This document shows, piece by piece, positions 4,831 to 55,834 of a stretch of 64,000 bases of DNA; position 1 is the stretch's first letter; every line of letters begins with the position of its first letter. A program made the translations under genes and the position numbers. The stretch lies in NCBI RefSeq assembly GCF_006345805.1, contig NC_043021.1, positions 2,232,001 through 2,296,000 on the forward strand, read 5' to 3'. The DNA is from Octopus sinensis. Lineage: Eukaryota. Under the pieces are notes generated by a model. That model had not been told where the DNA came from. It was given only the letters and a program-made list of their open reading frames with translations, and searched no databases.

Positions 4831-6699
4831 ATTAAATAGCCTGAGAACAAAAAGTTCTTTTTTTTTTGTTCTGTGAGTGCATCCCATCCTGTTGAATGGC
4901 TTGTCAGTGTTGTCTATAGGAAGGAGATAGCAGTGCAGGAGTGTTCCACACACACACACACACAACACACACACACACACACACTGCTTTTGTTGTTGTT
5001 GTTGACTGTGATGATGATGCTGCACCTTTTGGAAACATCCCTTCATTTCAAGAGCATTTATTTCAAGAGCATTTCATCATCCTCGCCATTTAACGTCCAT
5101 TTTCCGTGCTGGCATGGGTTGGACAGTTTGGCCAAACCTGGCAAGCTAGAGAGAGCTGTACTAGGTTCCAGTCTGATTTGGCTTGGTTTCTATGGCCAGA
5201 GGCCCTTCCTAATGCCAACCACTTTAGTGTGCGGGGGGTACCTTTTATGCGGACCAGCACTAGGGCCCTTGCAAAGCAAAATCCCCTTCAGCTGGGAGGA
5301 GAGCATTAACAACTGTGCTGTCGTGGGTGGGTCTTCTTGAGTACAACAAGTCCCCAGATATCTCAGTCCTTCATCTCTTTTCTAAGGCTCAGCGTCCTGG
5401 GACCAGCCTTCAGTACTTTGTCCTGTCTTTCTGGATCTCCCTTTTCCACAAGTTCCATCCACTTCTTTATGCAGCTGCCTACGTCCACCTGCATCACATA
5501 ACCAAACCAGTGTGCTCTTCTCTCTTGCACACTGTATCTCATTCTTCTTCTTCCTAACTTTCTCTACCTTTATCTTTTTTGTTTTACTTGTTTCAGTTGT
5601 TGCATTGTGGCCATGCTGGGGCATCACCTTGAAGGGTTTTAGTCAAACATTGACTTCATTTTTTTTAAAACCTGGTACTTACTTTATTTGTCTCTTTTGC
5701 TAAACTGCTAAGTTGCAGGGATGTGAACAAACCAACACTAGTTGTCAAGCAGTGTTTGGACACATACTCCCTCTTTCTCTCTCTCTCACACACACAGTGG
5801 GCTTCTTTCAGTTTTTTGTCTAACAAATCCATTCAGAAGGCTTTGGTCAGCCCAGGGCTATAATAGAAGACACTTGCCAAAGGTGCTTCTCTGTGGGACT
5901 GAACCATAGATAACATGGTTGGGAAGCAAGCTTCTCATCCATGCCGGTGGGTGTAGTATGATTTGAGCTTTAACTGCTGTTTCTAGCTGGCTGGTTGATG
6001 GCTTAGAAACTCTAACACAATGTTCAAACCCTGACAGAACAAAGGTGTGATTGCAGTGACCATTTTGTTTGTTTGTATATCAGGGACCATAGTGAGGTGG
6101 GGATGAGGGGTGAGTGAGAGAGAGAGAGAGAGGGCATTAGGGTCAGGGGTAGATGGAGTGTATGTGGGCTGGAGGTGAGGGTTGTTATGATAAGAAGAAA
6201 AGGGAGAGGGTAACAAAGCAGGAGATAGGGAAAGAAAGTATGAAAGTGGAAAGGGTGTTGGGAAAGGAGGAAAGTTTGTAAGGCTGCATAGGGGTAGAAA
6301 GGTCAGCAGTTTGATCTAAATAAAGACACCTGTGATAAAAAATAATAATAATAATAAAAAGGAAATAAGAGGAGAATTGAGTGTAATTAGAGAGAGAGAG
6401 AGAGACAGACAGAAGTGTGATTTGACCCAGATATGCCTCTTAGTGTGCAAGATGGAGGTGGAGGCTGGTCAGTACTGGTCAGGAAGTGATGGTGATTGTT
6501 TAAAAAGGAAGTCTATTTTAAAAGGTCTGGGACAGTTTGCAATGAAAACAGTTTAATAATAGTGAATTGACTATTTTATTACAATAGTGAAGGGGGCTTT
6601 TAAGCTGGCCCTCTGCAGAGGGCTAATTGGTCCTGTGGACGAAAAGAGAGCAATAATAATAATGAAGCACTTATTGGTACCCTACCAATATGGTATTAC

Positions 6700-14905: not shown

Positions 14906-15094
14906 AGTTATGTACCAGGGGATGGGTTCCTAATCAATTAATTATACTTCTCTGTGAAATTGTGATTTTTCTGTCTAAATCCTTCTTGTTGATTTCCATA
15001 GCGATTGAATTTGAGGGGTTTAAACCCCAGGCCTTCACCCTCCCCCCCATTCTGTGCCTTGTTTTAAAACCCTAATTCCATGCTACTATTCCAG

Positions 15095-15495
15095 CTCCAC
15101 AAGCTACTCTCTCAACCCCACTCCACTCAATTCCACAAGCTACTGCACTCAACTCCACAATCTACTCCATCTCCACTCCACAAGCTACTGCACTCCACTC
15201 CACAAGCTACTCCATCTCCACTCCACAAGCTACTGCACTCAACTCTACAATCTATTCCATCTCCACTCCACAAGCTACTGCACTCAACTCCACAATCTAC
15301 TCCATCTCCACTCCACAAGCTACTGCACTCAACTCCACAAGCTACTCCATCTCCACTCCACAAGCTACTGCACTCAACTCCACAATCTACTCCATCTCCA
15401 CTCCACAAGCTACTCCATCTCCACTCGACTCCACTCCATAAGCTACTCCACTCGCTATTCAATCTCCACTCGGTTCCACATGCTACTCCACTCTC
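15095..15495. repeat. Minisatellite with a 45-bp higher-order unit (22-mer + 23-mer)
   Basis: ctccacaagctactgcactcaa alternates with ctccacaatctactccatctcca, about 7 dimers. Confidence 0.92.
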
Positions 15496-15768
15496 CGCCT
15501 CTCCCCACCACCACCACACCCAGCTGTCCTCACGTGATGAACTTCTGGAGCACCTCCACTCCCTCCCTCCCTCCCACTTCCACCTTCACACAACTCCATT
15601 CTGAACCCTAACCCCTCCCCCCCCACCTCCCCTCCTTCAACACGGTGAGCACACACACACACATGCATATATCTACATACGCACAGACATATCTACATGC
15701 ATGCATGTAACTATACACGCACACATTACACCATTACACACACACGCACACACATCTACATGCACACA

Positions 15769-24579: not shown

Positions 24580-25565
24580 TTATTCTACTGAGGTCAACTT
24601 CTCCTTTCATCCTTTTTGAGGTTCAATGAATTTAAATTTCATTCTGACGGTTGATTGTAGTCGACTTCCCCTCCCCTCAAAACTGTTGGCCTTGAGCCAG
24701 TATTATTTATTCTGTAGAGAGAGAGGTGTTGACTTTGCCTTCATCCCTTTGGGGTCAATAAAGTAAGTACCAGCTGAGCACTGGGGTTGATGTAACCCCC
24801 TCCCCCCATTTAAAAATTCAGGCTTTGTCTCTACAGCAGAAAGTATTATTATTCTTATTGTTATTATTAAAGCAGCAAACTGGTAGAATCTTTGGTGCTC
24901 TGGGCAAAATGCTTTGAGGAATTTCGTCCATCTTCATGTTCTGAGTTCAAATTCTGCTGGGGTCACCTTTGCCTTTCATCCTTTCAGGGTCGATAAACTA
25001 AGTACCAGTTGCATACTGGGGGTGTCACTGTAATTGACTTATCACCTCTCCTGAAATTGCTGGCCTTGTGTCAACATTAGAAATTATTGTTGTTGTTGTT
25101 ATTATTATGAAGATAGTGTGCTGGCCAAATTGTTAGCACATCAGGCGAAATGCTTAGCAGTAGTTTGCCTGTCACTACATTCTGAGTTCAAATTCCACTG
25201 AGGTCGACTTTGCCTTTCATCCTTTTGGGGTCGATAAATTAAGTACCAGTTGATTGCTGGGGTGTCAATGTAATCGACTGGCCCCCTTCCCAAAATTTCA
25301 GGCTTTGTGCTTATTGTAGAAAGATTATTATTATTATTATTATTATTAAGGTGTCGAGCTGGGAGAATTGTTAGCACACTGGGCAAATTGCTTAGTGGCA
25401 TTTCGCCAGTCACTCCATTGAGTTCAAATTCTGCCAAGGTCAACTTTGCCTTTCATCCTATCAGGGTTGATGAAATAAGCACCAGTTATATACTGGGGGT
25501 GATGTGATCGACTACTCCCCTCCCCCCAAAGTTGCTGCCCTTGTGGCAAAATTTGAAACCATTAT
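24580..25565 (+). mobile_element. Cluster of ~5 head-to-tail SINE family B copies
   Basis: The ctttgcctttcatcc...agtaccag core recurs at ~24600, 24735, 24965, 25205 and 25445, separated by (ATT)n/(GTT)n tracts. Confidence 0.85.
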
Positions 25566-29424: not shown

Positions 29425-30909
29425 TATAACTTCTACATGCTCATCATACACACTGTTATCACTCTCTGTCTTCTGTGTATAATGTAATCCTTGCATTCAG
29501 TGTCGTTGCTCCTTTCCCACACTCTCTGCTGCTCCATTCCTCTGCGTCCAAAACGCCAATTCACAAATTGAGCAAAGTGTCTCTCAAATTCTTAAGTACC
29601 ACATTAAAGCATTTAGTCTCTCACTCTCTCTCTCTCTCTCTCTCTCTCTTTCATTGCTCACTCTTTCCCTCTCAATCACCTACCCTGTTTTTTTCTTTCT
29701 CTCTCTCTCTTCTGTTCTCTGTCATTTCAACGAACAACCCCCTCCCTTGTCCAATCACCCATTTCCTGTCCTGCTTGATCAACCCCCTCCTTAATCTAAT
29801 GTTCTCCCTCTCTTTCTGCCCCCCCCCCCCCCGTCACCCTCACCATCACACGTAAACAGCCAAACTGTTGTGTAACCCTTGACTTCCTAAACTGTCCTGT
29901 AACTGTTGTCAAGTGGTTGCGGTGGTGCAACACACACACACACACACATTAGATTTCTTTCAGTTTCTGTCTACCAAATCCACTGAGAAGCCTTTGGTTG
30001 GCCTATGGCTGTAGCGTAGGACACTTGCCCAAGGTGCCACCTTGTGGGGACTGAACCTGAGCCTACATGACTGGAAAACAAGCTTCTTACCTGTACAGCC
30101 ACGCCTGTGCTTATAACTCTGTTACTCTTACTTGTTTCAGCCATTTGACTGAGGCCATGCTGGAGCACTGCCTTGAGTCGAGCAGATCAACCCCAGGACT
30201 TATTCTCTGTATGCCTGGTACTTATTCTGTCAGTCTCTTTTGCTGAACCACTAAGTTATGGGGAAGTAAACACACCAGCATTGGTTGTCAAGCGATGTTG
30301 GGGGGGACAAACACAGACACACAAACATATGCACACACACACAGTATATAGTAGAAGACATTTGCCCGAGGTGCCACGCAGTGGTACTGAACCCAGAACC
30401 ATGTGGTTGGTAAGCAAGCTACTTACCACACAGCCACTCCTATGCCTACATACATACATACATATATATAATATGTATACACACACACATATAGCTGGGA
30501 TTCTTTCAGTTTCTGTCTACCAAAACCACTGCTTTGGTTGGCCCAATACTATTGTTGAAGACACTTGCTGAGGTGCCACATAGTGGGACTGAACCCTGAA
30601 CCTTGTAGTGGGGAACCAAACTTCTTATCACACAGCCACATGTGCACCTATGAAACAACAATAATAATAATGGTTTCAAATTTTGCCACAAGGGCAGCCA
30701 TTTTGGGGGAGGGGGATGAATCGATTACATCGACCCCAGGGTTCAACTGGTACTTATTTTATCGACCCCAAAAGGACGAAAGGTAAAGTCGACCTTGGAA
30801 TTTGAACTCAGAACGTTGTGATGGGCGAAATACCACTAAGCATTTCATCCGGCGTGCTAACGACTGCCAGCTCACTGCCTTAAATAATAATAATGGCTTC
30901 AAAAGTTTC

Positions 30910-30959
30910 CACAAGGGCAGCCAATTTGGGGGAGGGGCCCCAAATTGGCTGCCCTTGTG
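30910..30959. repeat. 22-bp perfect inverted repeat with a 6-nt loop inside a SINE B copy
   Basis: cacaagggcagccaatttgggg-gagggg-ccccaaattggctgcccttgtg. Confidence 0.95.
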
Positions 30960-39139: not shown

Positions 39140-40261
39140 CACGTCTTTGTCCCTCATCACTGCTTTGCCATCCAGTGTCGGTGTGTTTATGTCCACATAC
39201 TTTAGCTGTTAGGCAAAAGAGTCTGATAGAATAAATACCTGGTTTTAAAGAAAATTAGTAAAAGATTTGACTAAAGATTCTTCAAAGTGGTGCCCCAGCA
39301 TGGCCAAAGTTTAATGACTGAAACAAGTAAAAAGAAGAAAGGAAAAAAACGAACAATTATCAATGTTTTAGTTTCTCTGTCAATTATTTTTCCGCTTCAA
39401 TTGTTTCAGATCAATGAAGTGACCCACATGTTGGAATCAGCTGACTTAGCAGATTACAGTTGCTTTTGTGCATGTGTATGTATGCGCATGCATGCAGGCA
39501 TGCACACACTCACAGGCATACATACACCAAGATAACCTCAGATTCCTGTGGACAGTGGATCAAACATTGGCTAGCTTAAGAACAGCGCCACCTGCCATCA
39601 TCGGGCAGAGAATTGGAACCTTTGAATGGATGAAAGCAATAAAACTGATGCATGTTGCTTAATCTAATCCTTCCAACAAATCCAAAGAACTCAAAGATGC
39701 GAGGGGGGGGTAGACATACAGACAGACTGACCTCTGACTGTCCAGATCATTAGAATTTTACCTTTTTCCTTTAATAGAGTGATGCATACAACACCTTGCA
39801 GTGTTTAGTCATGTGTCTCTCTCTCTCTTGACATCCTGAGCTCAAATACTGTCATGGCCAACTTTGCTTCCTTCTGAAGATAACAAAATATGGTTCGGAC
39901 CTATTTTGGTTAGAATGCCACCTTTATTTTGAAAGAGTTAAAAATACTTAGCGGTATTTCGCCCATCACTACATTCTGAGTTCAAATTCCACCAAGGTCG
40001 ACTTTACCTTTCATCCTTTCAGGATCAATAAATTAAGTACCAGCTGAACACTTGGGTCGATGTAATCGACTCATCCCGACCTCCTCCAAAATGGCTGCCC
40101 TTGTGGCAAAATTCAAAACCATTATTATTATTGTTGTTGTGATTGTTTTGCTTTGATTTATGCCACAAAAGTCTTTTATTTCTTCTGTTCTTTTGTTTTT
40201 TGTTGCAATTTTGTTCCATTGATCTACTATATGTATACAATGCATCTATATGTATATATAG

Positions 40262-49257: not shown

Positions 49258-49532
49258 CTACTCTGACCCTTAGTAGTAGCACCTGTTAGGGTCCTAGCTA
49301 AGGGTTAATTAGTATGTGACTGACTGGGAGCGAAAGGCCCTTAGTTGTAGCTAGAACTTCCTTCTAAGAGAAGGAAAGAAAACCTGAAATGTAGTTGGTT
49401 TCTGGTTGTCTCTGCTTCTCTTGTGCCGTTGGTTTTATTGCACTATGAAGTGGGTTCAATTCTGTGCAGCACTTTACCTACACAAATCCATGCTCAGGAA
49501 CTTCTAGGACTTCTTTAGAAAATATTTGTGCA

Positions 49533-51300
49533 TCAAGGCATTTCGGATGCTGCTAAATTGAGAGGGGGTTTAAAAGTTGAGTGTGCTGTCCTGCCACCGG
49601 GTAACAAAGTAGCTGCAATGCCAGAGGAGGCTACAGCTACTGCAATGTCCTGATGCTGCCTAACTTCTGCAAGGAGAAGCTTTGTAATAAATGTTTTTCC
49701 TGTCCCTCCAGGAGCATCGAGGAAGAAGAGTCGTCCCTCGCGTTGGCGTACACTGTTAAGAATAGTTCTGTAGGCCTGCAGCTGGTCCGGAAGTAGTTTA
49801 GGCTCATTTTCAACAATGTACTTTGAAAGCGCTTGAGTGTCGTAGGTTGTTTCACGAATGACAGCAGTGGGAAGGCTATTTGACCCTGACCTGAATGCTT
49901 GTGGCAGGCCATACGTTGACAATTCATTTCCACCCAGTTTAGCAATTCTGTCTTCAATGTCAATGAGTGTTTTGTTACAGATTTCATTGCTGATACCCTC
50001 CATGTCAGGACAGAGCAGTTGAGCTTGGCGCTGAAAGTCTTCAGCCAGGTTGTCTCTATATTTGAGCCATAGAGTGGCCGGATCACACAGTTCGCATGCC
50101 TGTAGTAATGCTGCAAATAGTGCCCTGAGACTTTTAGGTGATTGTGATAAAGCAGCCTCTCCTAAAGTTGCATCCCATTGTGCACCATCTTCTAACAGAC
50201 CTTGTCGATAGCAGGCTTCTCTGTATGTTGTGCAGACATGTCCATGAGCGGTTTTTAGGGCCTGGAAAGACGTTAGCCTTCTGACCTCATGCAGTAGTAG
50301 ACGAAGGTAGAAGCACTCTTGTTGAGTGGGCTGCACTGTGTATACTCGCCCAAGGCAAGTGTGAAACTTAATGCCAGGGTATCCATGAACATTTTGACCT
50401 GCTTTCCGTGGGGCACATATTTTTCCATTCCAAGTGTAGTACGATGGAATCTGTGGATACAGCAAGGTTTGAGTGAATGGATCCACTTGACAAAGCTTGA
50501 AGAATGCAGTGAGTGTGCTATCCCTTGGTTCCTCTGCCAACAGAGAAGCATTAGCATCGGTGAAGTACACTCTTTGACCATTTTCCGGGTGCACTGCAAG
50601 CTGTTGAATGGCGGGGTGTCGTTGGTGATTTGGAAAGCCAAAGATGCGCCAGAAAGCCTCGTTGCTACTTATGTACCGTCCCACATGATAATGCGTCACC
50701 TCATCCTGGCAGTATTCTTGTTGAAGTCCAAACATTGCAGCGTCAGAACCCTTGTTTACATAATTGCAAACGTACTTGATGGATTTAACAGAGTTGCAAA
50801 ACTCAACGTTGATGTGGGCATTGAAAGTCTTTGACAGGAGTGGGCAGTATGGAACAATCCATCTATTATCAATATTGTGCTGTCCGATAGTTGCTGTGAA
50901 ACCTCCGTCTTCTGGTTTTCTGCGTCTGTATGATGGATACCCATCAGCTCCTGTCTGAGTTTCTTGTAGGAACCTCCTTGGAAATCTTTTTGAACATATG
51001 CTGTCCTTCAAGCATGGTGAGTTTATGTTGAATCCACGCCCACATGGACCATGTACCATGTTTGCTTTAACTATTTCGTATAGTTCTTTGTCTAAAGCTG
51101 GATCAGGAAGCTCTGCAGAGATTATCTTGTCGATGTCATTGGAATTGATCTTCACTGAGAGCCAAAGCAGGATATGAGCATGTGGAAGGCCCCTTTTTTG
51201 CCACTCGATTGTGTACATGTCACATTGTATGGGCCCAAAGACTTGCCCTTTTTGTATGAGCTCCATGAGAGAGATTAACTTCAGATGGAAAACTCGGGTG
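49533..51300 (-). mobile_element. Helitron RepHel fragment (HUH Rep domain plus start of the PIF1-like SF1 helicase), truncated at both ends
   Basis: The ORF 49533..51671 from residue ~124 contains TRVFHLK, the HUH motif EWQKRGLPHAHILLW (51172-51207), MVHGPCG, DNRWIVPYCP, HINVEFC, the Tyr motif KYVCNYVNKG, GRYISSNEA and FYLRLLL, then Walker A LDAPGGTGKT (~49692-49718) and VASSGIAATLLPGGRTAHSTFK. Confidence 0.95.
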
Positions 51301-52398
51301 TTGAGATTCCGGTTCGAATGTAAGGTTTGAAAGTGTTCCCAACAGTTATTAGTTGTTGTGGTAGAGTGTTTATGCCGAATATGTACGTATGCATGTATAT
51401 ATATATATATATGTATGCCTGTATATATGTGCAAAATCCACTGAGAAGGCTTTTGTTGGTCTGAGGCTACAGCAGAAGACACATGCCAAGTCACCACACA
51501 GTGGGACTGAACCCAGGACCATGTGTTTGGAATGTAGTTTGTTACCACACAGCCACACCTGCCCCTATGTATGTGTGTGTGTGTGTGTGTGTGTGCGTAT
51601 GTGTGTATGGGTAGATATATTATGCATGTATATATGTGTATATATATATATGTACATATTAACATGTACATCTATATATATACATCTACACATAAAATAC
51701 AAGATAAAAAGTTATATCGCTAGTGATAACAATACTCAAAATATATAACAGACTGGAATTGTAGGCCCGTCTCTTGCAATTTCGATCAATTGGATCTTCT
51801 CCTCCCTCTTGTATAGAAGTGTACGGCTGCAGTGAAATTCATTTTTGGACTTTCTTCTATCGAAGGCATTTTAACAAAAATGCTTCCGTAAAGATGGTGA
51901 AAATATTGTCAACTTCCCCAAACAGGGACACAATTCAATTCTGCCAAGGTCAACTTTTGCCTTTCATCCTTTCAGGGTCGATAAATTAGGTACCAGTTGC
52001 GTACTGGGGGTCGACCTGACTGTCCCCCTCCCCCCAAAATTTCAGGCCTTGGGCTTAGAGTAGAAAAGAATATAAGGCAGCTAGCTGGCGGAAATGTTAT
52101 CACGTCGGACGAAATGCTTAGCAGCATTTCGTCTGTCTTTACGTTCTGAGTTCAAATTCTGCAAAGGTCAACTTTGCTTTTCATCCTCTCGGGGTCAATA
52201 AATTAAGTACTAGTTGCGTACTGGGGTAGATCTTATCAACTAGCCCTCTCCCCCAAAATTTTGGGCCTTGTGCCTAGAGTAGAAAAGAACATATTAAAAT
52301 GTGCAAAGTTATATGCAGAAATATGAAATACTTGCACACTTCCACTGCACGCGTACATGTTATATACATACATGTGTGTGTGTGTTTGTATGTTTATT

Positions 52399-52455
<57 letters not shown>

Positions 52456-53120
52456 GCATGTATATACACCATTCATGCATGTACATACACATATATACAC
52501 ATGTCTAGGTTTAAACACAAGTGCATATGCAGACACACACACTGGCACATGTAGACTTCTCGTGCGCACACACACACACACACATGCAGAAATTAACATG
52601 CAGGCATGCACACACACGCTGACTCTCATGCACACACACAGGTACGCATACACACACTCCTCTTGAGGAATTCAGCTTTGATTTCTCCAGCAAATCTTGT
52701 AACTGTTCCTACCATGACCTCCCCACCTTACTGGGCCTGCCTGCTTCCCATCCTCCACACACACACACACACACACACACACAGTGTGCCCTACTTCTGC
52801 TCCTGACACACTTTTCTTCCTTTCTCTCCTCTTCCACCACCACCACCACCACCCCTGTTACACTGCACACTCCGACCCTTCTTCACCCCCCACCCCCACC
52901 CCACACACCCCCATGTTATTCTATATCGCTTGGAATTTGTGTCAGGGATCCACCCACTTGCTGATTACTTGCTCTATGTAACTGGGGGCCCCTTTTTTTT
53001 TTTTTTTTAATTTCCTTTATTGTTTTGTTTACAACCAATCTGTGCCCTTAACTCTGCCTACAAAGCAGCTGGGCTACGAAGAACAATCCTGGGTGGGTGG
53101 GGAGAGGGGAGAGGGTGCAG

Positions 53121-53242
53121 TTTCCTTTCTCTGCACCCCCTCTCCCTCCCTGCCACCTGCCCTGTCCCCACCCCATAGTAGTTGTTTGGGGGTGGGGACA
53201 GGGCAGGTGGCAGGGAGGGAGAGGGGGTGCAGACAAAGGAAA
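53121..53242. repeat. 54-bp inverted repeat with a 14-nt loop (1 mismatch)
   Basis: Arm 53121-53174 is the reverse complement of arm 53189-53242 except at one position. Confidence 0.95.
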
Positions 53243-53369
53243 CCGTATCCATCACGCCTTAGACAAACCACTTCTGAGTCTGACGCCTGAATTTGTATCC
53301 CATTTCTGGCCCATTTCAGTGGTGCCTTAATTTGCTATCCTTTGTTTTCTTGAGAGATGCTACCCCCAC

Positions 53370-53712
53370 AATATGTGCCTTAATCTCTACATGATTCTCT
53401 TAAAAATGTACTTTAATTATAACCTTTACTCTTAATCTTTAATCCCCCAGAATGTGCTCTAAATTCTACCCAATTCCCTTCAATGTTTTAATCTTAATCC
53501 TTAATCTTCCAAAATCTGCCTTAATTTTTGCCCAATTCTAGCAAGTGTGCTTTAATCTTATTCCATTATCCACCAAAATGTGCCTTAATTTTCACCTGAT
53601 TCACTAAAAGAATATGCTTTAATCTTGAACTGCCTGGAGATTCCTTAATGTTTCTTGCTTCCTTCTCCAAGACATTGCCTTAATCTGTGGTTTTCAAGAT
53701 GTGCTTTAACCC
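53370..53712. repeat. Degenerate ~33-bp tandem repeat, ~11 units
   Basis: The (a)atgtgccttaat(c)t core recurs at ~53375, 53408, 53454, 53483, 53516, 53547, 53580, 53614, 53640, 53675 and 53701. Confidence 0.75.
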
Positions 53713-53931
53713 TTTCTTTACTGTATTTATTTTGAGATGCTCTGTGTTTCATTCAATTAATTTTAGATGTAACAAAGAATTTAGTGAAATAACTTCGTTA
53801 TCATTCAGCTAGTGTTAGGAACATAAATTGTGACTAAGGTTTGGTGGAAGATTTTAATCCCAAACTTATGAAAACAAGACATTTGTACTACAGGGCCAGA
53901 GGCAGTTCCAGCTGGGTTGGTAACAAAAGGG
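53710..53931 (+). mobile_element. MITE family E
   Basis: Flanked by TTAA on both sides (53706-53709 and 53932-53935). Confidence 0.87.
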
Positions 53932-54294
53932 TTAACCCTTTAATATTCAGATTACCCAGCATCAAATGCTTATTGCTTCACATTGTTTTGGATTAATCCT
54001 ACATTATCTCCCAGATTTGAGATTTCGATGTAATTGTTTTTTTTAGAACGACATTAGCCCCTTTCCATACAAATTTCAGGCCTTATGTCTATAATAGAAG
54101 GAAAGAAAAAAAAAAAGGAAGCAACAGAAAATTTCAAAAAATCCACTTGTCTGTGTGTGTATAAGTGCATAAAACCCATCTATTACAACGCATTGTTCCA
54201 CTCCTCTGCAACCCATGTTCAAACACCCTTTAAGTTCATCTATTTATGGTCAGTCAAGTACTATCCCAGGGTTAGTGCATATCTCTCTTTCTCT

Positions 54295-54329
<35 letters not shown>

Positions 54330-55834
54330 TTTGTGTTCTGTCAGATGAAGGATAAGAGGGCTAAAAGAATGCCTCTTTGTCTGATCATGACCACACAGGC
54401 ACTTCAATTAATTACATTAATTAGCAAATCATGATACAACCTACTAAATCATTCTCAATCGTGATAGCCATGATTGGAGACGGTTTTTTTTTTTTAGGTC
54501 AGTGTATGTACAAGGATAGAAATCTGATCTTGGTGGTATGATATTGGTCCACTTGAAATTTTTTTCGTGATTCTCTTCTTGAAAGAGGAGAATGTCATGA
54601 CCCAATAACAAGCTGAAGAATGATAAATGTGGGTGGGGGGTGGCCGTGATTAGCTACTTATTGGATAATAGTTGTCTGTGGGTAGGCCCCACTATATCTT
54701 ACAGCAGGACCTGTCTTGTTTCTCTGGACAAGGCCCACAACATCCTACAACAGAGCCCGCTGTGTATCTCTGGACAAGGTCCACTTATTACTTTATTGCC
54801 CACAAGGGCTAAACATAGAGGGGACAGACAAATGTATTAAATCGATTACATCGACCCCGTAAGGATGAAATGCTAAGTTGACCTTGGCGGAATTTGAACT
54901 CGGAACATAACAGCAGACAAAATACTGCTAAGCATTTCGCCCGGGGCGCTAACGGTTCTGCCAGTTGACCACTTCATCTTAGGACAGGATCTGTTTTGTT
55001 TCCCTGGGCGAGGTCCACTACATCTTAGGACAACCCTCACACTCTGCCTTCAGCTAGGATTACATTATCCTCAGTGTATAAGAGCTCATCTCCTTTTTAG
55101 GATGCTGCAGTGCACGTGTGTGATTTGAGAGAGTGTCGGGCTGTTGTTTGTAGCAGATCAAGCAACTGTGTAAAGGCTCTCCCCTATCCCCTCTTTGGCT
55201 TGGCTGCTCTTACAAGCAAAAGTATGTTCCAGATGCTGACCTTACTCGTGTAACACAGGATGTTAGTTATAGAGAGAGGTCCAACTTCGTATGTTCTGAA
55301 AGATGACCCAGATTCTGATCATTACGCCACACATGCGCACACTCGTGCACGCACGCACTTATGTACGCACGCACACAGACACACACTCTTATACGGGCTA
55401 AAGAAACCCTCAACCTTATATCATTGATGACTCTTATTCACACACAGACTTAGACATTCACTCAGGTTCGCAACAATTTAAAACTTTATGCACACGGGCA
55501 GGGAGCAGGCAGAATTGTGACCCCTTTCTACAAAATGCAGGTGGCTTTTCATCTGGTTTTACATTCCAAGTTCAAACTCTGCTGCAGTCGACCTTGTTTT
55601 GCATCCTTTCAGGGTTCATAGAATAAGTATTTGTTGGACGCTCGGGTCAATTTAATCAATTAGCCCCTTCCAACAAATGCCAGGCGTTGCGCCTATAGGG
55701 AAAGAATTCTTTTTAAAGGTATTAGACAAACACACATAAATGCATGCACACACACACATACACATACCCCCACATAAATACCCATACCTGCACAAACACA
55801 TACAAATGCATATGTAGTCAAGGCTGTCTTAGTG

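What the first reader, a model, noticed from the sequence alone, without database searches (positions are those of the whole stretch)
53121..53242. 54-bp near-perfect GC-rich hairpin in non-TE sequence, with G-quadruplex potential on one arm
Left arm tttcctttctctgcaccccctctccctccctgccacctgccctgtccccacccc, a 14-nt loop (atagtagttgtttg), and a right arm that is its reverse complement with one mismatch. About 8 further bp pair with G-U wobbles. I see no other copy in the window and no TIR/TSD features. The right arm has multiple GGG(G) runs, so hairpin/cruciform and G4 are competing states. In the presumed sense pre-mRNA it would be a strong Dicer/Drosha or ADAR substrate (hpRNA, endo-siRNA or a young miRNA precursor). 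It lies next to a T16 tract, a 33-bp degenerate array and two MITEs. Like the 30910 hairpin, the loop is bordered by G/C runs, hinting at a recurrent fold-back mechanism.
Basis: partly seen in the sequence, partly recalled or inferred. Interest (0 to 1): 0.72.

Follow-up and report, generated by a model that had tools for sequence, protein, structure and literature searches.

The report
Template-switch hairpin in octopus DNA
A real, single-copy, near-perfect 54-bp inverted repeat sits in repeat-rich non-coding octopus DNA; it is most likely a recent replication "template-switch" copying accident of a known kind, and nothing available here shows that it makes a small RNA.

Summary
The hairpin is real and far beyond chance. 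It has a 45-bp perfect core (53130-53174 / 53189-53233), a 14-nt loop, one C:C mismatch and then 8 more bp, giving 54-nt arms. A weak 8-bp extension brings the arms to 62 nt at 94%. RNA folding gives -149 kcal/mol (+ strand) and -139 kcal/mol (- strand), z -13 to -15. It is single-copy in the window, has no target-site duplication, and lies about 1.8 kb outside a Helitron-derived repeat whose 5' boundary I fixed with two Octopus bimaculoides paralogs.

The window is from an octopus. The best explanation is a young inverted duplication made by replication template switching (TSM). The support is by analogy. The only other true hairpin in the window (30910) sits in a repeat whose three sister copies have one arm, and there about 25 nt were replaced by the reverse complement of the adjacent 22 nt.

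I could not obtain an ortholog, a second assembly or expression data, so origin and function remain inferred. It matches no Rfam family at threshold, and the stem is too long for a canonical miRNA precursor. A Dicer or ADAR role is only a structural possibility. Only a relaxed G4 motif (one 9-nt loop) exists in the arms; a canonical one lies just upstream.

Verdict: genuine, ordinary in kind, modest interest.

The parts
53121..53174 (+). Left (C-rich) arm, 54 nt. The inner 45 nt (53130-53174) pair perfectly with the right arm.
   Evidence: Sequence; the repeat finder I1; perfect-stem census.
53175..53188 (+). 14-nt asymmetric spacer / apical loop, ATAGTAGTTGTTTG.
   Evidence: It stays unpaired in the centroid structures.
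53189..53242 (+). Right (G-rich) arm, the reverse complement of the left arm with one mismatch (C53129 : C53234).
53113..53120 (+). Outer imperfect extension, left side. It pairs with 53243-53250 through 5 Watson-Crick pairs, 2 G:U pairs and 1 A:C mismatch. It may be microhomology or chance rather than part of the duplicated block.
   Evidence: read base by base.
53243..53250 (+). Outer imperfect extension, right side.
53091..53115 (+). Upstream G-rich tract 'U', holding the only canonical G4 motif (loops of 7 nt or less) of the locus. Together with 53121-53160 it can form an alternative, weaker hairpin (-51.8 kcal/mol, z -3.6).
   Evidence: PQS and G4Hunter scan, peak 2.32; fold. Its similarity to the right arm is not beyond composition.
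30910..30959 (+). Comparator: a 22-bp perfect hairpin with loop GAGGGG inside a SINE-like repeat. Its second arm (30938-30959) replaces about 25 nt that are present in three one-armed sister copies.
   Evidence: Census; blastn; alignment A1.

Best explanation
The locus is a genuine, evolutionarily young inverted duplication in non-coding, repeat-rich DNA of an octopus genome. During DNA replication the nascent strand briefly switched template and copied about 54 nt of neighbouring sequence in reverse-complement orientation, then switched back. This is a template-switch mutation (TSM), related to quasi-palindrome formation. In a single event it left two arms separated by a 14-nt spacer. One later substitution, or a copying error, accounts for the C:C mismatch. 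The result is a DNA palindrome that can form a cruciform or hairpin. If the region is transcribed on either strand, it gives a 54-62-bp dsRNA stem. That stem would be raw material for Dicer-type small RNAs or ADAR editing, but nothing indicates that it has been recruited for a function. What is shown: the structure, its statistical exceptionality, single-copy status in the DNA searched, absence of TE hallmarks, location outside the nearby Helitron-derived unit, and TSM activity in this same window at the 30910 hairpin. What is inferred: that this particular hairpin arose by TSM, that it is young, and that it is neutral.
For: (1) The arms are exact reverse complements over 45 bp and match at 53 of 54 positions, adjacent to each other with a short asymmetric spacer. 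No point-mutation process gives this: the longest stem in 30 simulated windows was 15 bp. (2) There is no other copy in the window, in two O. bimaculoides loci totalling 43.5 kb, or in JGI metagenome contigs. There is no exact TSD of 9 nt or more and no 14-mer TSD with up to 2 mismatches. (3) It lies outside the Helitron-derived repeat. The window, L001 and L002 share one 5' boundary at window ~51265-51298, 1.8 kb from the hairpin. (4) Direct in-window precedent: in the 30910 hairpin, three sister repeat copies carry ...GGGGGAGGGG-GATGAATCGATTACATCGACCCCAG..., while the 30910 copy has the reverse complement of its own adjacent 22 nt in place of those ~25 nt. This is the diagnostic TSM pattern. 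These are the only two non-microsatellite hairpins with stems of 14 bp or more in the 64 kb. (5) The size is within the published range for single TSM events: inverted fragments from 15 nt up to 83 nt (PMC10710096) and up to 59 bp (PMC8794818). (6) About 2% arm divergence (1 of 54), against about 10% between Helitron paralogs and 24-28% between the sister repeat copies, suggests a recent event. (7) An asymmetric non-adapter loop, an internal mismatch and unique flanks running more than 10 kb on both sides argue against a fold-back read or assembly artefact.
Against: No ortholog, paralog or second assembly of this locus could be obtained. The ancestral one-armed state, which is the defining evidence for a TSM, is therefore not shown for this hairpin, and the argument rests on analogy with 30910. 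Genome-wide copy number is unknown: a low-copy TE or retroposed sequence carrying the palindrome would look the same in about 107 kb of searched octopus DNA. A minus-strand AATAAA plus A16 lies 91 nt from the hairpin, which is compatible with the hairpin sitting in a retroposed 3' end. The near-perfect pairing could also reflect selection or arm-to-arm conversion rather than youth. The switch-point microhomology is unconvincing (5 of 8 Watson-Crick pairs).
Confidence: 0.6

Rival explanations
1. The palindrome is an internal feature of a low-copy mobile or retroposed sequence, for example the 3' UTR or tail of a 5'-truncated non-LTR retrotransposon or a processed transcript inserted on the minus strand. 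In that case it is not a local de novo event.
For: On the minus strand, AATAAA (53022->53017) is followed 8 nt later by A16 (53008->52993), with the hairpin 91 nt upstream and a 62-bp tandem array further upstream. This layout is typical of retroposed 3' ends. Only about 107 kb of octopus DNA could be searched for copies.
Against: No TSD was found next to the A-tract, either exact at 9 nt or more or as a 14-mer with up to 2 mismatches; the 8-mer matches are at the chance level. No copy or diverged relative of the hairpin or its flanks exists in the window or L001 by blastn or nhmmer, nor of the hairpin region in L002, although 37% of the window is internally repeated. By eye, the six-frame translations nearby show no reverse-transcriptase or endonuclease remnant. 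Even if this were true, the palindrome inside the element would still need an inverted-duplication origin.
Confidence: 0.15
2. The hairpin is a functional small-RNA locus, that is a hairpin-RNA/endo-siRNA or atypical young miRNA gene, or a dedicated ADAR-bound dsRNA element. Its near-perfect pairing would then be maintained by selection. This is compatible with a TSM birth.
For: The predicted dsRNA is very stable on both strands. The 14-nt loop meets the loop length of 10 nt or more seen in pri-miRNAs (PMC10710096). Octopuses have about 90 lineage-specific miRNA families, and their A-to-I editing is concentrated in hairpin-rich introns and 3'UTRs (PMC9699675). TSM hairpins have become miRNA genes in primates.
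Against: No expression data could be consulted. No Rfam family is matched at its gathering score, and the sub-threshold hits are generic and symmetric between strands. The stem of 54-62 bp is far from the ~35-bp pri-miRNA design. No gene, exon or promoter was identified around it. Most TSM hairpins are never expressed: more than 6,000 suitable hairpins yielded at least 18 miRNA genes in primates. Stem adenosines are few and mostly in poor ADAR context.
Confidence: 0.1
3. The hairpin is an assembly or sequencing artefact, such as a chimeric fold-back read or a missed hairpin adapter.
For: Fold-back chimeras do occur in long-read and amplified libraries. I could not retrieve an independent assembly of this locus.
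Against: Such artefacts give long palindromes (read-scale) that are perfect, with no spacer or an adapter as the spacer. Here the arms are only 54-62 nt, the 14-nt spacer is ordinary asymmetric sequence, there is an internal C:C mismatch, and unique sequence continues on both sides with no Ns in the window. The 30910 hairpin shows the same kind of event embedded in a repeat copy.
Confidence: 0.05
4. The hairpin is a miniature foldback/MITE-type transposon consisting almost entirely of its terminal inverted repeats, or the terminal hairpin of a Helitron.
For: Long inverted arms with a tiny internal region resemble foldback elements. A Helitron Rep/PIF1 remnant lies 1.8 kb away.
Against: No TSD is present at any of the four plausible arm boundaries. 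It is single-copy in the DNA searched. The Helitron-derived unit ends at ~51265-51298 in all three copies. The hairpin is on the 5' side of the Rep/Hel ORF, whereas Helitron hairpins are short 16-20-nt palindromes near the 3' CTRR end (established knowledge).
Confidence: 0.05

Closest known systems
Template-switch-mutation (TSM) hairpins, including TSM-born primate miRNA precursors (Loytynoja & Goldman 2017; Monttinen & Loytynoja 2022, PMC8794818; Monttinen et al. 2023, PMC10710096)
   Same: An adjacent reverse-complement copy creates a whole perfect stem in one step. The size is within the reported range (15-83 nt). It occurs in non-coding sequence with no TE hallmarks. A second, demonstrable TSM hairpin lies in the same window.
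   Different: No ancestral state is available for this locus. The stem is longer than most TSM-born miRNA stems. There is no expression evidence. The lineage is a cephalopod, whereas the two TSM papers I read deal with mammalian miRNA loci and with rRNA genes.
Quasi-palindrome correction (Ripley-type templated mutation)
   Same: A perfect inner core is flanked by imperfect outer pairing. A weaker hairpin (U + spacer + left arm, -51.8 kcal/mol) could represent an earlier imperfect palindrome.
   Different: U's similarity to the right arm is not beyond what composition gives, so a pre-existing quasi-palindrome is not demonstrated.
Hairpin-RNA (hpRNA) / endo-siRNA loci of Drosophila and mouse oocytes
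   Same: It is a near-perfect intramolecular dsRNA, longer than a miRNA stem, and would be a plausible direct Dicer substrate.
   Different: From my own knowledge, known hpRNA stems are usually hundreds of bp and are defined by abundant 21-22-nt reads and by targets. Neither reads nor targets could be examined here.
Canonical animal miRNA precursors (Rfam / MirGeneDB)
   Same: It is a stem-loop with an apical loop of 10 nt or more.
   Different: The stem is 54-62 bp and almost bulge-free, against ~35 bp with mismatches. No family is matched at its gathering score. The scores are strand-symmetric and generic.
Foldback/MITE transposons and Helitron 3' hairpins
   Same: They also have inverted arms, and a Helitron remnant lies nearby.
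   Different: There is no TSD, no additional copies, the hairpin is on the wrong side of and outside the Helitron unit, and the arms are far longer than a Helitron terminal palindrome.

Membership tests
TSM-generated inverted repeat | The target segment is an exact or near-exact reverse complement of a nearby source segment. | tested here: met
   53 of 54 positions match, with a 45-bp perfect core and a 14-nt spacer.
TSM-generated inverted repeat | The ancestral, outgroup or paralogous state lacks the inverted copy, and the cluster of differences is explained by one reverse-complement copying event. | not testable with these tools
   No ortholog or paralog of 52300-53700 was found. For the comparator hairpin at 30910 this feature was tested and met.
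TSM-generated inverted repeat | It is not explained by transposition: no TSD and not a dispersed family. | tested here: met
   No TSD. Single copy in the 64-kb window and absent from 43.5 kb of O. bimaculoides loci. Genome-wide copy number was not tested.
Canonical animal miRNA precursor | An imperfect stem of about 35 bp with an apical loop of 10 nt or more. | tested here: not met
   The loop is 14 nt, which is acceptable, but the stem is 54-62 bp and nearly perfect. The criterion is as stated in PMC10710096.
Canonical animal miRNA precursor | A match to a curated family model at its gathering score. | tested here: not met
   There are 0 hits at gathering score in the whole window. The best sub-threshold hit is MIR6426, a plant family by its upper-case MIR name, at 71 bits against a gathering score of 96, with identical scores on both strands.
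Canonical animal miRNA precursor | Presence in the octopus miRNA catalogue (MirGeneDB; Zolotarov et al. 2022). | not testable with these tools
   The held supplements contain no miRNA sequences: the let-7 positive control was absent. The negative string search is therefore uninformative.
Canonical animal miRNA precursor | 20-26-nt reads from both arms, with 2-nt 3' overhangs and 5' homogeneity. | not testable with these tools
   No small-RNA data are available.
hpRNA / endo-siRNA locus | A long near-perfect intramolecular dsRNA. | tested here: inconclusive
   A 54-62-bp stem is predicted, but this is shorter than typical hpRNAs and transcription is unknown.
hpRNA / endo-siRNA locus | Dicer-dependent ~21-22-nt small RNAs and identifiable targets. 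| not testable with these tools
   No expression data and no access to the genome for a target search.
MITE / foldback transposon | Target-site duplication flanking the terminal inverted repeats. | tested here: not met
   The flanks at boundaries 53113/53250, 53120/53243, 53121/53242 and 53130/53233 share no repeat.
MITE / foldback transposon | Multiple dispersed copies. | tested here: inconclusive
   None in about 107 kb of octopus DNA. The whole genome was not searchable.
Helitron terminal hairpin | A short (16-20 nt) palindrome about 10-12 nt upstream of the 3' CTRR end, inside the element. | tested here: not met
   The hairpin is on the 5' side of the Rep/Hel ORF, 1.8 kb beyond the unit boundary shared by three copies, and its arms are 54-62 nt.
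G-quadruplex motif (G3+ N1-7, four runs) | Four G-runs of 3 or more separated by loops of 1-7 nt. | tested here: not met
   The arms qualify only with one 9-nt loop (relaxed rule, loops up to 12 nt), with G4Hunter 1.8-1.96. The canonical motif is met only by the upstream tract 53091-53115, with G4Hunter 2.32.
ADAR substrate | A-to-I editing observed in a dsRNA longer than about 30 bp. | not testable with these tools
   The structure would qualify if transcribed. Only 5 of the 20 stem adenosines in the + transcript have a 5' U or A neighbour.

The most novel reading that the evidence does not exclude
The hairpin is a very young, octopus-lineage-specific small-RNA gene (hpRNA/endo-siRNA or an atypically long proto-miRNA), or an ADAR-bound dsRNA element, born in one step by template switching and already expressed. 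That would make it a snapshot of de novo regulatory-RNA birth in the animal group with the largest invertebrate miRNA expansion and the most extensive RNA editing.
Probability: 0.08. Interest if true: 0.55.

Novelty: new member of a known kind. Interest (0 to 1): 0.3.

Why it matters
If the reading is right, this locus and the demonstrable 30910 event show that replication template switching operates in an octopus genome. That is the process proposed to seed new miRNA genes in primates, and here it produces long perfect hairpins at a visible density of 2 in 64 kb. Coleoid cephalopods have an unusual expansion of lineage-specific miRNAs, and their heavy A-to-I editing depends on hairpin substrates in introns and 3'UTRs. 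A high supply of TSM hairpins could therefore be one source of that raw material. This single locus adds little on its own. Its value is as an example, and as a prompt for a genome-wide TSM census in cephalopods.

Tried and rejected
(1) Rfam at gathering score on the whole window found nothing. The permissive scan gave 148 generic, strand-symmetric sub-threshold miRNA hits, which I rejected as homology.
(2) Exact look-up of 10 ORFs overlapping or flanking the hairpin found none in the 15-billion-protein collection.
(3) A concatenated six-frame translation of the locus searched against 5.8 billion proteins gave no hit. I therefore could not reach an independent or orthologous assembly.
(4) An exact 25-mer of the arm is absent from JGI metagenome contigs.
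(5) The Helitron route to an ortholog failed. P0001/L001 and P0117/L002 are paralogs with non-syntenic flanks. They were still useful for fixing the repeat boundary.
(6) The string search of the Zolotarov 2022 supplements was negative, but the let-7 control was also negative, so I discarded the result as uninformative.
(7) I tested the idea that the upstream G-rich tract U is a diverged copy of the right arm, which would indicate two events. Four of 36 other G-rich tracts score as well, so it is not established.
(8) The retroposition idea (AATAAA + A16) remains weak because no TSD was found.
(10) The exon search through single-copy, high-entropy ORFs gave nothing convincing. The host gene and transcribed strand remain unknown.

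Full report
OBSERVATION. It has a C-rich 54-nt left arm (53121-53174), a 14-nt spacer ATAGTAGTTGTTTG (53175-53188) and a G-rich right arm (53189-53242). The right arm is the reverse complement of the left apart from one C:C mismatch at 53129/53234. The inner 45 bp (53130-53174 / 53189-53233) are perfect. The repeat finder extends the arms to 62 nt (53113-53174 / 53189-53250) at 94%. Read base by base, the outer 8 positions are 5 Watson-Crick pairs, 2 G:U pairs and 1 A:C mismatch, so they add to the + strand RNA only.

Predicted stabilities are -149.2 kcal/mol for the + RNA (z -13.4), -139.3 for the - RNA (z -15.1) and -77.7 for the + strand DNA (z -16.0). None of 200 dinucleotide shuffles did as well in any of the three folds. 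In 30 third-order Markov simulations of the window, the longest perfect short-loop stem was 10-15 bp. Once microsatellite self-complementarity is removed, the real window contains only two hairpins with stems of 14 bp or more: this one, and a 22-bp one at 30910.

CONTEXT. The window is animal DNA rich in (CA)n/(TA)n microsatellites and SINE-like repeats, and 37% of it has another copy within the window. A 712-aa ORF at 49536-51671 on the minus strand carries Helitron_like_N and PIF1 domains. Its best database relative, at 87% amino-acid identity, is an Octopus bimaculoides protein, and the other close hits are also from Octopus. The window is therefore from an octopus genome, though the species is not determined.

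I fetched the two closest O. bimaculoides loci, L001 on CM046603.1 and L002 on CM046602.1. Each matches the window only over the Helitron segment: 49529-51298 at 90.5% for L001 and 49529-51265 at 89.7% for L002. The flanks are not syntenic, so both are paralogs and not orthologs. L001 and L002 begin to resemble each other at exactly the same 5' point. The amplified unit therefore ends at window ~51265-51298, and the hairpin lies 1.8 kb outside it. The interval between them holds SINE fragments (51394-51605 and 51934-52298) and microsatellites.

The stretch 52300-53700, which includes the hairpin, has no other copy in the window by blastn. nhmmer, run on 52900-53720, found no diverged relative in the window or L001. 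There is no arm-like sequence in L001 or L002. I cannot say whether the region is intronic or intergenic, or which strand, if any, is transcribed.

IS IT A MOBILE ELEMENT OR AN ARTEFACT? None of the four plausible arm boundaries is flanked by a target-site duplication. It cannot be the Helitron's terminal hairpin. It is on the 5' side of the Rep/Hel ORF and outside the shared unit, and its arms are three times longer than the 16-20-nt palindromes near Helitron 3' ends (the last point is from established knowledge).

One feature stops me from calling the region simply 'non-TE'. On the minus strand an AATAAA (53022->53017) is followed 8 nt later by A16 (53008->52993), 91 nt downstream of the hairpin. 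That is the look of a retroposed polyadenylated 3' end. However, I found no TSD beside the A-tract: the exact 8-mers are at the chance level (about 4 expected, 4 seen), and there are no 14-mers with up to 2 mismatches. I also saw no retrotransposon coding remnant by eye.

An assembly fold-back artefact is unlikely. Such artefacts are read-scale and perfect, with either no spacer or an adapter as the spacer. Here the arms are 54-62 nt, the spacer is ordinary asymmetric sequence, there is an internal mismatch, and unique sequence continues on both sides with no Ns in the window.

ORIGIN. The decisive evidence would be a one-armed ortholog, and I could not get one. Exact ORF look-ups, a six-frame protein search of the locus and a metagenome scan for the arm all returned nothing.

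The window does supply an internal precedent. The 30910 hairpin lies in a SINE-like repeat with three sister copies in the window, at 30660, 40132 (reverse strand) and 25565 (reverse strand). In alignment A1 all copies share ...CCACAAGGGCAGCCAnTTTGGGGGAGGGG.... The three sisters then continue with GATGAATCGATTACATCGACCCCAG. The 30910 copy instead carries CCCCAAATTGGCTGCCCTTGTG, the exact reverse complement of its own preceding 22 nt, and then rejoins the family sequence. Replacement of about 25 nt by an inverted copy of the neighbouring sequence is the textbook footprint of a replication template-switch mutation.

Published work shows that such events create entire hairpin stems in one step. 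Inverted fragments run from 15 nt up to 83 nt (PMC10710096), and TSM-like patterns reach 59 bp (PMC8794818). The 54-nt copy here is within that range. The low divergence between the arms (1 of 54), against about 10% between Helitron paralogs and 24-28% between the sister repeat copies, suggests a recent event.

I therefore consider a TSM-type inverted duplication the best explanation, with confidence of about 0.6. The 'G/C runs bordering the loop' that prompted it are probably incidental. I cannot tell which arm is the source. The upstream G-rich tract (53091-53120) resembles the right arm, which would favour the C-rich arm as the insert. That resemblance is not beyond composition, since 4 of 36 G-rich control tracts score as well. 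The tract plus the left arm alone fold at -51.8 kcal/mol (z -3.6), so an earlier imperfect palindrome is possible but not shown.

FUNCTION. Nothing here demonstrates a function. Rfam has no hit at gathering score in the entire window. With permissive settings the hairpin 'matches' 148 unrelated families, almost all of them miRNA families from plants, animals and viruses. All are below threshold and score about equally on both strands. This shows only that the hairpin is a long perfect stem. The octopus miRNA catalogue could not be checked, because the held supplements of PMC9699675 contain no sequences (the let-7 control failed), so my negative string search carries no weight.

Structurally, the loop of 14 nt suits a pri-miRNA, but the 54-62-bp, almost bulge-free stem does not fit the ~35-bp design (PMC10710096). 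If transcribed, it would be a direct Dicer substrate of the hpRNA/endo-siRNA kind rather than a Drosha substrate. ADAR could bind it, and octopus editing is concentrated in hairpin-rich introns and 3'UTRs (PMC9699675). But the + transcript's stem has only 20 adenosines, and just 5 of them have the favoured 5' U/A neighbour.

On G-quadruplexes, each strand has one G-rich arm with G4Hunter 1.8-1.96, but the arms fit the motif only if a 9-nt loop is allowed. The only canonical motif is the upstream tract 53091-53115 (G4Hunter 2.32). Tracts of this strength are common in the window: 519 windows of 25 nt reach |G4Hunter| of 1.75 or more. In RNA, a fully complementary C-rich arm in cis should out-compete a G4 (inference).

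COMPARISON AND VERDICT. The locus works like, and most probably is, a TSM-generated inverted repeat. It meets the features I could test: an adjacent reverse-complement copy, no transposition hallmarks, and a size within range. The defining ancestral-state test is open for this locus and met only for its neighbour at 30910. It fails the tested criteria for a canonical miRNA precursor, a MITE/foldback element, a Helitron hairpin and a canonical G4 motif. Membership of the hpRNA or ADAR-substrate classes depends on expression data that I do not have.

It is a new member of a known kind. It is a clean example and is of some interest for cephalopod genome biology, but it would not surprise a specialist. 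I score interest at 0.3. The most novel reading still open is an already-expressed, lineage-specific small-RNA gene caught at birth. I give that about 8% probability, and it would deserve about 0.55 if true.

Noticed in passing
window 30910-30959 (sister copies at 30660-30793, 39997-40132 on the minus strand, 25439-25565 on the minus strand): A 22-bp perfect hairpin with loop GAGGGG lies inside a SINE-like repeat. Three sister copies have one arm only. In this copy about 25 nt are replaced by the reverse complement of the adjacent 22 nt, which is a demonstrable template-switch mutation.
   Followed up: yes
window 49529-51298, minus strand; L001 9969-11738; L002 9485-11207: A Helitron Rep/PIF1 helicase remnant (Helitron_like_N + PIF1) is cut inside PIF1 at 49529. 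Its ORF start is extended artificially by microsatellite sequence. Two O. bimaculoides paralogs, about 90% identical, share the same 5' boundary, which suggests a truncated unit that was amplified or duplicated as such.
   Followed up: partly
window 52993-53022, minus strand: AATAAA is followed 8 nt later by an A16 tract, which looks like the 3' end of a retroposed polyadenylated transcript whose body would include the hairpin and the tandem array. No target-site duplication was found.
   Followed up: partly
window 52984-53008, plus strand: GGGGGCCCC followed directly by T16 superficially resembles an intrinsic or pol III terminator. It is probably just the complement of the A-tract feature above.
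   Followed up: no
window 53091-53115, plus strand: A canonical G-quadruplex motif GGGTGGGTGGGGAGAGGGGAGAGGG (loops of 1-3 nt, G4Hunter 2.32) lies immediately upstream of the hairpin. It is a stronger G4 candidate than either arm.
   Followed up: partly
window 53424-53596 (degenerate copies from ~53260 to ~53720): A tandem array with a 62-bp period (2.7 copies, 75% matches) is built from ~31-bp half-units containing GTGCCTTAAT. It is single-copy in the window and its origin is unknown.
   Followed up: no
window 51394-51605, 51934-52298, 53706-54055, 54785-54940: Interspersed repeats flank the single-copy island that holds the hairpin, with 12, 15-21, 5 and 14 copies in the window respectively. 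The second is a SINE of the type I recall, from memory only, as the abundant octopus tRNA-derived SINE.
   Followed up: no
window 15054-15611: A minisatellite of roughly 48-bp units gives long repetitive ORFs in several frames on both strands (for example the repeated HLHSTSYCTQLHNLL). It is not a gene.
   Followed up: no
window 5366-5563, minus strand: A short ORF containing RRAHWFGYVMQ resembles, by eye only, the C-terminal tail of non-LTR retrotransposon reverse transcriptases.
   Followed up: no
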